Source: Salpingoeca rosetta (lineage: Eukaryota; Protista; Choanoflagellata). Taken from it: a DNA stretch of 64,000 nucleotides. The stretch spans positions 571,312 through 635,311 of the forward strand of contig JAWQFM010000014.1 in NCBI GenBank assembly GCA_033442325.1. The letters are read 5' to 3'. The notes beneath the pieces are model-generated. The model saw only the letters and a program-made list of their open reading frames with translations. It was not told the DNA's origin and searched no databases. Made by a program: the position numbers and the translations under genes. Each line of letters begins with the position of its first letter. The first letter of the stretch is position 1. Shown one piece after another: positions 44,963-54,905 of this stretch.

Positions 44963-50241
<5,279 letters not shown>

Positions 50242-50895: not shown

Positions 50896-52324
50896 TCACA
50901 AGAGCTTGACGATGGCTGTTGATTGCTGCCGCAGGCGCGTTCGCAGCGTCTCCACCTCGGCTTGTACCTGGGCCTGATGGAGAGAAGGCGGGCAGGGGCA
51001 GATCGCAAATCGCGCACGTATGAGTGAGGGAGGGGGGGTGAGTCGGCAGTTGAGGGAAGGGTTTGGAAAGATGTTGCAGATGGATATGAGAGGCTGAGCT
51101 GACACGATAACACGGCGCATTTCAACCCAACACCTTGAAATGCGGCCAGCATCAGTAGACAACAAAGGCTTACGTGGTAAGAGTGGTAAGCTGCTGTAAT
51201 CTCCTCCAGTGTCTGAAGGAACTCGGCTTCTTGCTTCTTCAACTGCTCCTCGTGCGTCTTCTGCGTCGCTCTGACGGCCTCTTCGTATTGGCCAGACAGG
51301 TCCTGAGGAGCAACAGCAATGGATAAGAAGAAGAAGAGAAGGATACAAGTTGAAAGGCAGCAAGGAAAGCAACGCAGAACACAAGCAAGGGGGCAGACGA
51401 AGCAAATCACCCTTACAAACACACGCACACACCCTTGGTTTAAGCAGACCTGAAATGCAGTAAGAACGACGGCCCAACGCTGTGAATCCTCGAGCAACAC
51501 GCGACGAGAGTCATCGACCCCTTCCTTCGCTTTGAGTTCGTTCAAGCTGCAGACACACACACACGAACACACACGAACACACACGAACACACACACACAC
51601 ACACACCAGTACGCAGGGGCATGGTCGATGAGAATCGGCGAGCGAGACAGAAGTGTGTCTCAACGCAGGTTACACAACACCCCAACACGCTTCCGCCCTT
51701 GCCTCGCTTCAAGCGTACACAGTTAGCTCATCGCACATTCTTTCTTTACCGTTCCTCGACAGCTTGAAGCGAGGATTGCACGGTCTGCTTGAGTGTTGCC
51801 GCCTGTGCTTTACACAGTGTCTCAAGTTTCTTCTTCTTCTGCGGATTCTCGTCCTTCTTCGGCTTGAGTTGCTTCAGGATGTTCTCAAAGTCCCTGAGGC
51901 GCGCGTGTAACAGTGTTTCAGTGAGAGGGCGCGCGCGGGTGTGTGCGAGTGCGGGTGTGTGTGTGTGTGTGAATAAGTGCGCGAATACAGTGCTTTTGCG
52001 TCGCACTCGCTTCTTGACAAACCACCCCCTTTGTTGTACATCTCGCTTTGAGACGTCGTGTGGTAACGTACAGGTCAAAGCCGTTCGCGTCCCCGCTACC
52101 ATCCTGTACATCAGTGTTTGTGGGGGGGGGGCAAGGGATGAGCACAGCATAGGATGGTTTAGATGGTTTGGTGGTCTGATACAAGGATACACACCCAGTC
52201 TCTGCCTGTCACTGTCATCCCTTCCCCAACCCCCCCCCACACACACGTTGGAACTCACACCGCCCCACACACGAACCCGTACCATGGAGGCTTCGTCGTG
52301 ATCCCTCTTCCCGCGCCTTGGCAT
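50896..52324 (-). CDS. Coiled-coil protein of about 175 aa, possibly SYCP3/Cor1-like
   Basis: Six exons join in frame: MPRRGKRDHDEASM|DGSGDANGFDL|DFENILKQ...KKKKLETLCKA...EER|LNELK...W...FQ|DLSGQY...EFLQTLEEI...YH|AQVQAE...AIVKLL*. The gene model is well supported; the family assignment is tentative. Confidence 0.6.
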
Positions 52325-52521: not shown

Positions 52522-52630
52522 TTTGGCGCCAAAACCAAACCCTTCCTCTTGCTGCTCCTGGTGCTGCTGCTCGACGTCACATCATGTCGTTTCAATGTGT
52601 ACAAAACTGCCAGGGTTTTTCGCGCCAAAA
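52522..52630. promoter_or_regulatory. Two E2F-type palindromic sites (TTTGGCGCCAAA 52522-52533; TTTTCGCGCCAAAA 52617-52630) upstream of the SYCP3-like gene
   Basis: Both contain TTTSSCGC matches on both strands, 200-300 bp upstream of ATG 52324. Confidence 0.6.
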
Positions 52631-52680: not shown

Positions 52681-53301
52681 TCACGCTGTCGCCGCATCTT
52701 CCGTCGGAGCCGGGTCATTGCCATAAGTGGGTTCCTCAGGCTGACTCATGTTGCTCTCCCCTGTCGCCCCACCAGCACCAAGGGCCGGCGGGTCGATTGC
52801 TTGCTCCACACCATCGCGACCACTATCCGCTGTGGTGTCGCCCTGACCGCCCTCAGCATCATGGCCAGCATCAGCATCATCACCGTCGTTGTCGTCGTCG
52901 TCGTCGTCATCATGGTCAGCATTAGCATCATGGTTATCGTTCTCATCATCACCGTTCTCATCAGGACGATCAGTTTCCACGCCCTTGTCACCGTCGTAGG
53001 CGTCAAGGCTCAGTGACACGCCGAGCTGCTCCGCCAATTCACGCAGTTCCGGAAAGAGCTTGGTCCGATCAATGTGCGGGTTTCGCGCAATGTGGTGGTC
53101 AAACACGCTTTGGATCGCCCTGCGAATCGCACCAGCACACAAGAGGCAGCAAGAAGCAAGCAGGCGTCAGAACAGCACACAACAGGCGCAAGCACCCACG
53201 CGAAGGTTGCGCGTGCCACGGTCAAACAAGAGGTGCTTGGCAAGCACTGCAACGGTTGCCCACGCAGATGGCGGAGAGACGCAGAACAACCACCCCATGC
53301 G

Positions 53302-53378
<77 letters not shown>

Positions 53379-54905
53379 GTCTGTAACGAGGCCTTGGTCC
53401 AGGATCTCTCGCGTCACGGCGCTGACGACTTCCTGAATGTGGTCGTCATCGTCCATCATCTCTGGCAGCGGGTGCCGCGTCATTGCGTCCAGCGCGGCCT
53501 GATCACGTGTCAGCTCGTCCAGGCGCTCCTCCAAACGTTTGGAAAAGCCCGCCAGCGTTGTTGACAACACGGCCGCCTTTCGACTCGCAGTTGCCCACAG
53601 TGTCTTTGCAGAGGATGATGACGCCGCTGTGCGCGGTTTTGTGCCCTCAGTGTCCCGAGCAGCTGTGGCCGTGGTCGTTGCTGGGGTGGCACGTGATTGC
53701 CACAGCGCTGCGATGGACGATGTCGTTGCCGGTTTGTTCGCATCTGCATCCGCAGCGGGTGCCTGTGCACTGTCATCGCGAGCGGCAGCATCGTCAGTGC
53801 ACGTGCTGCCGTTATCGTACTCGTACTCTTGGGTGAGCGTGTCATGAAACCGAAGGCGTCGCGTGCGCTGCAAGTCGCCCCCACGAGCACTGTTGGCGCC
53901 ACCTTCAGCGCCATCATCATTGGCATTCCCATTCTTGTCATCGTCGCCGTCGTCATTGTCGCTGCCTCCACCATTGTGATCAGTGTCAGTCGAGGCAGGC
54001 TGCTGCCATAATCGCTGCGTCTTGGAGAGTTGATGCTCTTCACCACCGTTGCGGTCTGTGTTGGCAAATCCCACATGATCATCATCGTTGTCGGCCTCAG
54101 TTGTCAACCGTGCAGTTGTTGTTGCAGTTGCCGTTGCCGTTGCGTCCGTGTCAGCCCAGAGCGCCTGGGCCGGGTTCAGACGCACGGTGTCGTTTAGGGG
54201 GTCTGTTGGGGCCTCCGTAAGCAGGGTTGGCGTATGCTTGCCTGCTGGCATCCCTGCCTCCTCTGTACCGCCCCAAGTTTCAGCGACAGTGTTACCCTCG
54301 CCATCATCCCCGTCATCGTCAAGCCGCCGCGTAGCCATCAGATCATCGTCATTCCGGCGCGTTTGCTGTCAACGCAAACAGGAGTGAGTGAGTGAGTGAG
54401 TGAGTGAGTGAGTGAGTGAGTTTAGCCCATGCGTCTGCTTGAATGGTTGTACGCGACGTGTGTGGGTTTCGACACACTTTGAAGCTGCTTTCATGATCAT
54501 TTCGCTTCTTCATCATCACCTGGGTGGGTGGGCGCGAGCGCCTGTGCTGAGATGTTTTGGCCTGTCGTTGCTTCGCACGCTGCTTGCCCATATGGCTGTG
54601 TGTCATGCTTTTGGGAGGCCTGTTGTCAATCGTCGCTGTTGATGCCAAGCCCAGCAACAGCACAAGCCGACACGCAGCAACAGAAATTATTTGTGAGTGA
54701 GCTGGTGGGTGCGCGCCAATTTGTTGTTGTTTGCTTTTGTTGTTTGTTTGTTTGTTTGGTTGGTTGTTTGTTTGGTTGTTTGGTTGTTTGTTTGTTTGTT
54801 TGGTTGTTTGTTTGTTGTTGTTGTTGTTGTTGTTGTTGTTTGCTTTTGTTTGTTTGTTTGTTTGTTTGTTTGTTTGTTTGTTTGTTTGTTTGTTTGTTTG
54901 TTTGT

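What the first reader, a model, noticed from the sequence alone, without database searches (positions are those of the whole stretch)
50896..52324. SYCP3/Cor1-like small coiled-coil gene hidden in six short exons
Seen: a spliced ~175-aa protein that the ORF track does not show whole. KKKKLETLCKA resembles the SYCP3 conserved motif AKRKRLEMYTKA, there is a central lone Trp, and EFLQTLEEI resembles QFIKSMEEL (recalled). Size, basic N-terminus and hydrophobic C-terminus also fit a meiotic axis-core protein. Spacing between the motifs differs by about 5 residues from human and coiled coils mislead, so this is a hypothesis.
Basis: partly seen in the sequence, partly recalled or inferred. Interest (0 to 1): 0.75.

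Follow-up and report, generated by a model that had tools for sequence, protein, structure and literature searches.

The report
Small coiled-coil gene, possible SYCP3 relative
A real six-exon gene of the choanoflagellate Salpingoeca rosetta encodes a small helical protein with a nuclear-import-type basic patch. It resembles the animal meiotic chromosome-axis protein SYCP3 in layout, short motifs and protein-language-model features, but no sequence-profile test shows kinship, so the SYCP3 idea stays open.

Summary
Six minus-strand exons (52324-50896), all with GT..AG introns, join in frame to 173 aa. The product is identical to the public protein PTSG_05207, a "hypothetical protein" of Salpingoeca rosetta.

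The SYCP3 reading is neither shown nor excluded.

Against it:
- Pfam Cor1 scores 13.7 bits (cut-off 32.1), below several unrelated helical families. It is absent from either half of the protein and from a six-frame scan of the genome.
- A search of 1.84 billion proteins finds only two choanoflagellate relatives.
- A profile of the family finds no SYCP3 chain in the PDB.
- Fold searches return only generic helical hairpins, and the tetramer prediction gave no verdict.

For it:
- The nearest named ESM-Atlas clusters are all SYCP3/Cor1/Xlr or plant "ASY3-like" axis proteins (0.86-0.88, lead level only).
- The most conserved block carries an [EQ]NIL motif 16 residues before a KKKK patch. Human SYCP3 has QNML 17 residues before KRKR.
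- The promoter holds two of the genome's 44 perfect E2F palindromes. E2F-type sites also precede the SPO11 and Mei5 genes.

No RNA data could be obtained. I put an SYCP3-type axis role at about 0.4. The scan holds another note on this same stretch (s1-432491) and a withheld follow-up.

The parts
52283..52324 (-). Exon 1: ATG and residues 1-14 (basic RRGKR, then acidic)
   Evidence: Identical to the start of P0001. Not conserved in the Barroeca orthologue.
52072..52103 (-). Exon 2: residues 15-24 plus two bases of codon 25 (acidic, Gly/Asp-rich)
   Evidence: AG acceptor, GTACGT donor.
51750..51893 (-). Exon 3: residues 25-73, the most conserved block (short helix 27-34, basic patch, start of the coiled coil)
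   Evidence: AF2 helices 27-34 and 42-77.
51875..51889 (-). Codons F27-L31 (FENIL), a motif like the Nt6 patch of SYCP3
   Evidence: FQNIL in the orthologue. Human Nt6 is 69-EVQNML-74 (PMC4102245). Composite-motif statistics.
51827..51838 (-). Codons K44-K47 (KKKK), followed by L-E: like BP2 of SYCP3, and also like a monopartite nuclear localisation signal
   Evidence: KKKKK in the orthologue. Human BP2 is 88-KRKR-91.
51450..51546 (-). Exon 4: residues 73-105, with the G/D/S-rich linker 78-83 and the only Trp (W97, codon 51474-51476)
   Evidence: The exon is recovered in the metagenomic relative L004.
51174..51302 (-). Exon 5: residues 106-148, the conserved core of the long helix (Y111, H122, F133, Y144, Y147)
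   Evidence: 67% identical over 43 residues to the same exon in marine metagenome contigs L002-L007.
50896..50973 (-). Exon 6: residues 149-173 and the TGA stop
   Evidence: The stop overlaps a donor-like GTGAGT. No conserved downstream exon was found.
52522..52533 (.). Perfect palindromic E2F-type site TTTGGCGCCAAA, about 200 bp upstream of the ATG
   Evidence: One of 44 such sites in the genome, against 4 for the reversed control.
52618..52629 (.). Second perfect E2F-type site, TTTCGCGCCAAA, about 300 bp upstream of the ATG
   Evidence: This is the only pair of perfect sites within 100 bp of each other in the genome list.

Best explanation
SHOWN. PTSG_05207 is a real, single-copy, six-exon gene. 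It encodes a 173-aa, almost wholly helical protein. Its parts are a disordered acidic N-terminus, a short conserved helix (FENIL), a conserved KKKK patch of the kind that acts as a nuclear import signal or DNA-binding patch, and about 130 residues of coiled-coil-type helix. That helix is interrupted once by a conserved Gly/Asp/Ser linker. The family diverges fast (39% identity between two related choanoflagellates) and can be recognised by sequence only in choanoflagellates. The short promoter carries two optimal E2F sites.

INFERRED, about 0.4. It is an SYCP3-type component of the meiotic chromosome axis. The helices would pair antiparallel into a rod-shaped oligomer, consistent with conserved aromatic residues that pair up around H122 (W97+Y147 and Y111+F133 both sum to 244). 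The basic patches at the rod ends would hold DNA. The short N- and C-terminal motifs would link rods into fibres. Expression would be switched by E2F-type factors together with other meiotic genes. Whether it is an orthologue of animal SYCP3 or an independent analogue is open.
For: Gene model. Single copy. Helical layout: AF2 helices 27-34, 42-77 and 84-172, mean pLDDT 72; heptad signal in three blocks. Nearest named ESM-Atlas clusters by features are SYCP3 (0.88, 180 of 256 features shared), Cor1-domain, Xlr5C-like and two plant 'ASY3-like' clusters of 222 and 265 aa; 9 of the 10 best named hits share a family or clan. Motif pair: [EQ]NIL lies 16 residues (15 in Barroeca) before a run of four or more Lys in both orthologues, against QNML at 71-74 and KRKR at 88-91 in human SYCP3 as printed in PMC4102245. 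The composite occurs in 11 of 200,000 shuffles of P0001 and nowhere else in 148,000 six-frame residues. This block is the best conserved part of the protein. Promoter: two of the genome's 44 perfect E2F palindromes (control 4) lie 200 and 300 bp upstream. E2F-type sites also lie 50 bp from a Mei5/Sfr1-domain ORF and as a twin about 550 bp upstream of the SPO11 exon, against a background of 0.16 per kb. No other Cor1-detectable gene occupies the SYCP3 role in this genome. The tail-to-tail neighbour was read by an earlier agent as TERB1-like; I could not confirm that.
Against: No profile-level similarity to SYCP3. Cor1 scores 13.7 bits against a 32.1-bit cut-off, ranks under unrelated helical families, is out of register with the motif alignment and is absent from either half. 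It is also absent exon by exon and in the six-frame genome scan. phmmer over 1.84 billion representatives finds only choanoflagellate relatives. The family profile finds no SYCP3 chain in the PDB at E<=10. ESM scores under 0.9 are leads only, and about one shuffled protein in ten reaches that level. The motif match is post hoc, and KKKK may simply be an import signal. The helix has a conserved break, and the region from the basic patch to the C-terminus is about 19 residues shorter than in human SYCP3. BP1 and the C-terminal patch are not conserved between the two orthologues. No SYCP2-type partner or paralogous coiled coil was found, although that method is weak here. E2F sites equally fit an ordinary S-phase gene. 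There are no expression data.
Confidence: 0.4

Rival explanations
1. A choanoflagellate-specific nuclear coiled-coil protein with a mitotic cell-cycle role (for example replication, chromatin or kinetochore), expressed at G1/S under E2F and unrelated to the meiotic axis.
For: Twin optimal E2F sites are the classic mark of G1/S genes. One perfect site lies beside a HIRAN-domain repair gene. Earlier notes report E2F/CHR elements at CENP-F, Polo and Ki-67-like genes. There is no sequence link to any meiotic family. The basic patch fits a plain nuclear import signal.
Against: The ESM feature neighbours are specifically meiotic axis families, not mitotic ones. The protein was not found in the many vegetative choanoflagellate transcriptomes held in the protein collection, only in a genome-based Barroeca gene call and in metagenome DNA. 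E2F-type sites also precede the meiosis-specific SPO11 gene.
Confidence: 0.33
2. A diverged member of another small coiled-coil family of meiosis or recombination, such as SYCE2/TEX12/SYCE3-type central-element proteins, Mer2/IHO1/Rec15, or Swi5-Sfr1-type accessory factors.
For: Size and all-helical build fit several of these. The SYCE3 hairpin matches residues 41-113 of the model at Z 7.8. The promoter type is shared with a Mei5/Sfr1 gene.
Against: None of these families appears in the Pfam list even at E<=10 or among the ESM neighbours. Z 7.8 is within the noise range for helical models. A separate Mei5-domain gene already exists.
Confidence: 0.15
3. A cytoplasmic coiled-coil adaptor (BLOC-1/BORC-like, a STIM-like fragment, or an autophagy adaptor with an acidic F-x-x-I motif) whose resemblance to SYCP3 is only compositional.
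For: Weak hits to BORCS6 and Muted in the orthologue and to the STIM1 SOAR coiled coil (E 0.01). D-x-D-F-E-N-I fits the loose Atg8-binding pattern, which I know from the literature and did not test.
Against: All of these hits are far under their cut-offs and differ between the two orthologues. The conserved P-x-KKKK patch and the E2F promoter point to the nucleus.
Confidence: 0.08

Closest known systems
SYCP3 (animals; Pfam Cor1 PF04803; human tetramer structure 4CPC, PMC4102245)
   Same: A small protein with a disordered N-terminus and one long coiled-coil region. A conserved short motif ([EQ]NIL against QNML) lies 15-17 residues before a four-residue basic patch followed by Leu, at the start of the helix. 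Conserved aromatic residues are placed symmetrically, as expected for antiparallel packing. The C-terminus is hydrophobic. It is the nearest named family by language-model features.
   Different: No significant profile or pairwise similarity. From the basic patch to the C-terminus it is about 19 residues shorter. The helix is broken by a conserved linker at 78-83, whereas human SYCP3 has one helix from 82 to 221. It has one Trp instead of two. BP1 and the Ct6-type patch are not conserved between the choanoflagellate orthologues. Oligomeric state, DNA binding, fibre formation and meiotic expression are all untested.
SYCP3-type proteins of other lineages (plant ASY4/'ASY3-like', S. pombe Rec27, kinetoplastid KKT16; Tromer et al. 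2021, PMC8131943)
   Same: Coiled-coil-only proteins of similar size that diverge beyond BLAST reach. Plant 'ASY3-like' clusters of 222 and 265 aa are among the nearest ESM neighbours. As that paper reports for metazoan SYCP3 profiles, apolipoprotein families appear as cross-hits.
   Different: [quoted passage not shown] No such paralogue or SYCP2-type gene was found here. The Pfam ASY3-like profile does not match.
Small central-element proteins of the synaptonemal complex (SYCE2, TEX12, SYCE3)
   Same: Small, helical, fast-evolving meiotic proteins. The SYCE3 hairpin superposes on residues 41-113 of the model (Z 7.8, rmsd 1.8).
   Different: That Z is within noise for helical hairpins. There is no profile or language-model signal for these families.

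Membership tests
SYCP3 / Pfam Cor1 (PF04803) | Match to the Cor1 profile at or above the curated cut-off (32.1 bits) | tested here: not met
   13.7 bits, E 0.079, fifth among helical noise. Equally weak in the orthologue. Absent in either half, exon by exon and in the six-frame genome scan.
SYCP3 / Pfam Cor1 (PF04803) | Recognised SYCP3 proteins recovered by sequence or profile search | tested here: not met
   phmmer over 1.84 billion representatives gave only P0002 and P0003, both from choanoflagellate-type sources. Word searches returned only the protein itself or it and P0002. The A2 profile against PDB sequences found no SYCP3 chain at E<=10.
SYCP3 / Pfam Cor1 (PF04803) | Conserved Nt6 motif followed by basic patch BP2 at the start of the helix | tested here: met
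   ENIL 28-31 with KKKK 44-47 in P0001; QNIL 25-28 with KKKKK 40-44 in P0002. Human has EVQNML 69-74 and KRKR 88-91. Seen in 11 of 200,000 shuffles. This is a motif-level, post hoc match, not proof of homology.
SYCP3 / Pfam Cor1 (PF04803) | Second basic patch (BP1) and the conserved C-terminal six residues needed for fibre assembly | tested here: inconclusive
   RRGKR at 3-7 occurs only in S. rosetta. The C-termini read AIVKLL, SFSAM and ISQLL in the three relatives.
SYCP3 / Pfam Cor1 (PF04803) | Uninterrupted helix of about 140 residues forming an antiparallel homotetramer | tested here: inconclusive
   The AF2 monomer has helices 42-77 and 84-172 with a conserved linker between them. The four-copy prediction gave no verdict. 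Fold searches returned only generic hairpins.
SYCP3 / Pfam Cor1 (PF04803) | Meiosis-specific expression and localisation on chromosome axes | not testable with these tools
No paper in the library names PTSG_05207.
SYCP3-type proteins in the sense of Tromer et al. 2021 | An SYCP2-type (ARM-PH-coiled coil) gene in the same genome whose coiled coil is the closest paralogue | tested here: inconclusive
   No hit for SYCP2_ARLD, SYCP2_SLD, Red1 or ASY3-like, and no paralogous coiled coil. The same method recovers only one 24.5-bit HORMA exon, so absence means little.
ASY3-like (PF20435) | Match to the profile | tested here: not met
   No hit in the whole-protein Pfam scan at E<=10 or in the genome scan.

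The most novel reading that the evidence does not exclude
PTSG_05207 is a true orthologue of animal SYCP3. The SYCP2/SYCP3 split, currently placed in the metazoan ancestor (PMC8131943; PMC13693662), would then predate animals. Together with the TERB1/TERB2-like genes reported by this scan, choanoflagellates would already have had an animal-type meiotic axis and telomere-attachment kit, switched by E2F-type sites.
Probability: 0.28. Interest if true: 0.65.

Novelty: new member of a known kind. Interest (0 to 1): 0.45.

Why it matters
Synaptonemal-complex proteins evolve so fast that their origin is disputed. SYCP3 is currently traced only to the animal ancestor. A choanoflagellate SYCP3-type protein would move that origin back. 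It would also give a tractable single-celled model, since S. rosetta mates in the laboratory and can be transfected and edited, for studying how axis fibres assemble. If instead the protein is a lineage-specific E2F target, it is still a clean example of a fast-evolving nuclear coiled-coil gene with one of the strongest E2F promoters in the genome. Either way, the report separates what has been tested from what only looks similar.

Tried and rejected
1. Exon-by-exon Pfam scan by reference found nothing.
2. Six-frame Cor1 scan of the genome gave one hit (C15, 17 bits, E 0.21). It lies in intron-like sequence with an internal stop and is at the level of the Methanosarcina control, so it is noise.
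3. Foldseek against the PDB, VIA-align wide and the Atlas shape search returned only generic helical hairpins and long helices, with Z <= 8.8, which is within noise for helical models.
4. Complex prediction with four copies of residues 25-173 gave no verdict (score 0.01) and is not evidence either way.
6. The JGI metagenome scan with the family alignment found no further relatives.
7. The ENA contigs of the marine relative all end in repeats just upstream of exons 4/5, so its exon 3 could not be read.
8. The weak own-genome hit on C3 is a 1283-aa repeat coiled coil with no Pfam family, not an SYCP2-type gene.
9. Pfam scan of 30 long ORFs next to the other perfect E2F sites had low yield: Mei5, HIRAN, two retrotransposons and some unrelated enzymes. 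It is too noisy to define a regulon.
10. The strict site TTTSGCGC is absent upstream of the two Rad51-family genes and SPO11. Only the wider TTTSSCGC form is present there.
11. Pfam scan of eight ORFs of the neighbouring 'TERB1-like' gene found no family, so that neighbour's identity was not confirmed here.
12. A search for a conserved seventh exon downstream of the stop found none.

Full report
**1. What is there**

The window is part of contig C14 of a 55.4-Mb, 68-contig genome. An exon-3 search identifies the organism as Salpingoeca rosetta. On the minus strand between 52324 and 50896 lie six short exons:
- 52324-52283
- 52103-52072
- 51893-51750
- 51546-51450
- 51302-51174
- 50973-50896

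Every intron starts with GT and ends with AG. The exons sum to 522 nt, which is 173 codons plus TGA. No single ORF shows the product.

I sent no hand-joined sequence to any search tool. The join was made only inside a script, to check the reading frame. The exon-3 search was run as a region of the 192-aa open frame that happens to hold exons 1 and 3. It returned the public protein P0001, "hypothetical protein PTSG_05207 [Salpingoeca rosetta]", 173 aa, identical to the joined model. All later whole-protein work used that database record by its id.

The model has comparative support:
- The Barroeca monosierra orthologue P0002 (170 aa, 39% identity, E 2e-32) aligns across every exon junction with only two small gaps, both in the unconserved N-terminus.
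- A marine metagenomic relative keeps the introns after residues 105 and 148.
- The gene is single-copy in the genome.

**2. The protein**

AlphaFold2 on the two-sequence alignment (mean pLDDT 72) gives:
- a disordered segment 1-25
- a short helix 27-34
- a helix 42-77
- a break at 78-83
- one long helix 84-172

The break is Gly/Asp/Ser-rich in all three relatives. Heptad-type hydrophobic periodicity is seen in residues 55-78, 86-108 and 124-170, with a polar stretch around 109-123.

Conservation between the two orthologues is concentrated in F27-L59 (F-x-NILKQLKPK, P-x-KKKK-x-E-x-LC, QAA-x-L), in R87/R88/W97, and in Q110-Y147. The conserved aromatic residues pair up around H122: W97+Y147 and Y111+F133 both sum to 244. 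An antiparallel helix pair centred on H122 would show this pattern. This is my inference from the sequence.

The patch P-x-KKKK-[LI]-E looks like a classical monopartite nuclear import signal. That rests on established knowledge and was not tested.

**3. Tests of the SYCP3/Cor1 reading**

Negative results:
- On the whole protein, Cor1 scores 13.7 bits, E 0.079, against a cut-off of 32.1. It ranks behind Baculo_PEP_C, Apolipoprotein, DOCK_C-D_N and DUF5344.
- It is equally weak in the orthologue and vanishes when the halves are scanned separately.
- The Cor1 profile finds nothing at this locus in a six-frame scan of the genome. Its only hit elsewhere is noise.
- phmmer against 1.84 billion representative proteins finds only P0002 and a 50-aa exon-5 fragment, P0003.
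- The word-index searches find no relative beyond P0002.
- The family profile finds no SYCP3 chain among PDB sequences at E<=10. The top hits are the STIM1 SOAR domain (E 0.01) and Spc25 (E about 1), which I read as coiled-coil noise.
- Fold searches give only generic helical hairpins.
- The four-copy complex prediction returned no verdict.

On these results it is met.

Positive leads:
- In the ESM Atlas feature search, the best named clusters out of 7.7 million are SYCP3 (0.88, 180 of 256 features shared), a Cor1-domain cluster, Xlr5C-like (both 0.86), and two plant clusters named "meiosis-specific protein ASY3-like" of 222 and 265 aa. Nine of the ten best named hits share a family or clan. 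The tool states that scores under 0.9 are leads only. It also states that for a first named hit in this range, 170 or more shared features are typical of true family members (9 in 10) and uncommon otherwise (1-2 in 10). The size of the plant clusters fits ASY4, the plant counterpart of SYCP3. That point is from my own knowledge and is untested.
- The structure paper on human SYCP3 (PMC4102245) defines a conserved patch Nt6 (69-EVQNML-74, needed for fibre assembly) and a basic patch BP2 (88-KRKR-91, DNA binding) at the start of the helix. P0001 has ENIL at 28-31 and KKKK at 44-47. P0002 has QNIL at 25-28 and KKKKK at 40-44. The order is the same, and the spacing is 16 and 15 residues against 17 in human. 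The composite pattern arises in 11 of 200,000 shuffles of P0001 and 2 of 200,000 of P0002, and nowhere else in 148,000 six-frame residues. The comparison is post hoc, so the true significance is much weaker. Still, the motifs sit in the best conserved block of the protein.
- Tromer et al. (PMC8131943) note that metazoan SYCP3 profiles cross-hit apolipoproteins. The same families appear among the weak hits here. This shows shared composition, not kinship.

Differences from human SYCP3:
- The stretch from the basic patch to the C-terminus is about 19 residues shorter.
- The helix is interrupted.
- There is one Trp rather than two.
- BP1 and the C-terminal patch are not conserved among the choanoflagellate sequences.

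**4. Context**

The upstream gene on the same strand ends at about 52681, which leaves a 357-bp promoter. That promoter holds two perfect palindromic E2F-type 12-mers, at 52522-52533 and 52618-52629.

Genome-wide there are only 44 such sites, against 4 for the reversed control. This is the only place in the list with two of them within 100 bp.

Other sites that I checked:
- One perfect site lies 50 bp from an ORF with a Mei5/Sfr1 domain (E 1.8e-11).
- One lies beside a HIRAN-domain ORF.
- Two lie in retrotransposon copies.

With the wider consensus TTTSSCGC (background 0.16 per kb):
- A twin site lies about 550 bp upstream of the SPO11 exon.
- Single sites lie upstream of both Rad51-family genes.
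- Two sites lie just upstream of the neighbouring gene that starts near 44963.

Earlier notes of this scan report the same theme at ZIP4/DMC1 and SPO11-TRIP13. I checked only the SPO11 and Mei5 cases myself.

E2F control fits a meiotic regulon, but it fits an ordinary G1/S gene equally well.

The tail-to-tail neighbour was called TERB1-like by an earlier agent. My quick Pfam check of eight of its ORFs found no family, so I give the adjacency little weight.

Searches for an SYCP2-type partner found nothing. The same exon-wise method recovers only one borderline HORMA exon, so it is too weak in this intron-rich genome to show absence.

**5. Literature**

- PTSG_05207 is named in no paper of the library.
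- The SYCP3-type gene of animals is currently placed at a duplication of the SYCP2 coiled coil in the metazoan ancestor (PMC8131943).
- Orthologues are reported down to sponges and ctenophores (PMC13693662).
- An older survey found only minor similarity to SC proteins in choanoflagellates (PMC4132317).

**6. Verdict**

The gene is already annotated, but only as a hypothetical protein.

Membership in the Cor1 family is not shown, because the defining profile test fails. An SYCP3-like role remains the single most likely named function, at about 0.4. It rests on language-model neighbours, a motif pair and the promoter context, none of which is decisive. The main rival, at about 0.33, is a lineage-specific nuclear coiled-coil protein of the mitotic cycle.

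Expression during mating and meiosis, localisation, and the oligomeric state of the recombinant protein would settle the question. S. rosetta is a system in which all three can be done.

Noticed in passing
window 52522-52533 and 52618-52629; G000 genome-wide list: The perfect palindromic E2F 12-mer TTTSGCGCSAAA occurs 44 times in 55.4 Mb, against 4 for the reversed control. This promoter is the only place in the list with two within 100 bp. Other sites lie next to a Mei5/Sfr1-domain ORF (L020) and a HIRAN-domain ORF (L033).
   Followed up: partly
L058:1992 and 2018 (G000:C2, about 1525.5 kb): Twin GCGGGAAA (E2F-type) sites 26 bp apart, about 550 bp upstream of the SPO11 TP6A_N exon. This agrees with earlier scan notes on an E2F-type SPO11-TRIP13 promoter.
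   Followed up: partly
L030:2477-5011 and L045:3228-5012: Two of the perfect E2F 12-mers lie beside or at the 5' edge of long open frames with reverse-transcriptase (and, in L030, gag) domains. Part of the genome's count of 'E2F sites' may therefore be carried by a retrotransposon family.
   Followed up: no
window 50896-50905; L004:640-660: The TGA stop of the gene overlaps a donor-like GTGAGT. In the marine relative the frame stays open at the same point and a GTACGT sits at the same position and phase. No conserved further exon was found downstream, so the true 3' end in the relative is unresolved.
   Followed up: partly
window 51556-51610 and 51940-51975 (introns 3 and 2); L004:1-34 and 240-345: The introns of this gene carry (GT)n/(CA)n and other simple repeats next to their splice sites. 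In the marine relative the same introns hold (CTC)n and (TTG)n runs. All six of its contigs that were fetched (15 carry the fragment) end within 360 bases upstream of the exon-5 fragment.
   Followed up: no
L013:2518-6366 (G000:C3, about 2546.5-2550.4 kb), minus strand: A 1283-aa open frame made largely of dozens of tandem 11-residue units of the type AEHAQQLEQKD, flanked by ordinary coiled coil. No Pfam family matches. It surfaced only as a chance hit to P0001.
   Followed up: partly
window 52681-54338, minus strand: The gene just upstream on the same strand has extremely acidic, Asp/Asn/Gly-rich low-complexity exons and ends only 357 bp before the ATG of PTSG_05207. The two E2F sites may therefore lie in that gene's 3' untranslated region as well.
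   Followed up: no
L002-L007 (ENA marine metagenome contigs, one from Tara): An uncultured marine relative carries the same gene (exon 5 is 67% identical at the protein level), so close kin of S. rosetta are present in ocean metagenomes.
   Followed up: partly
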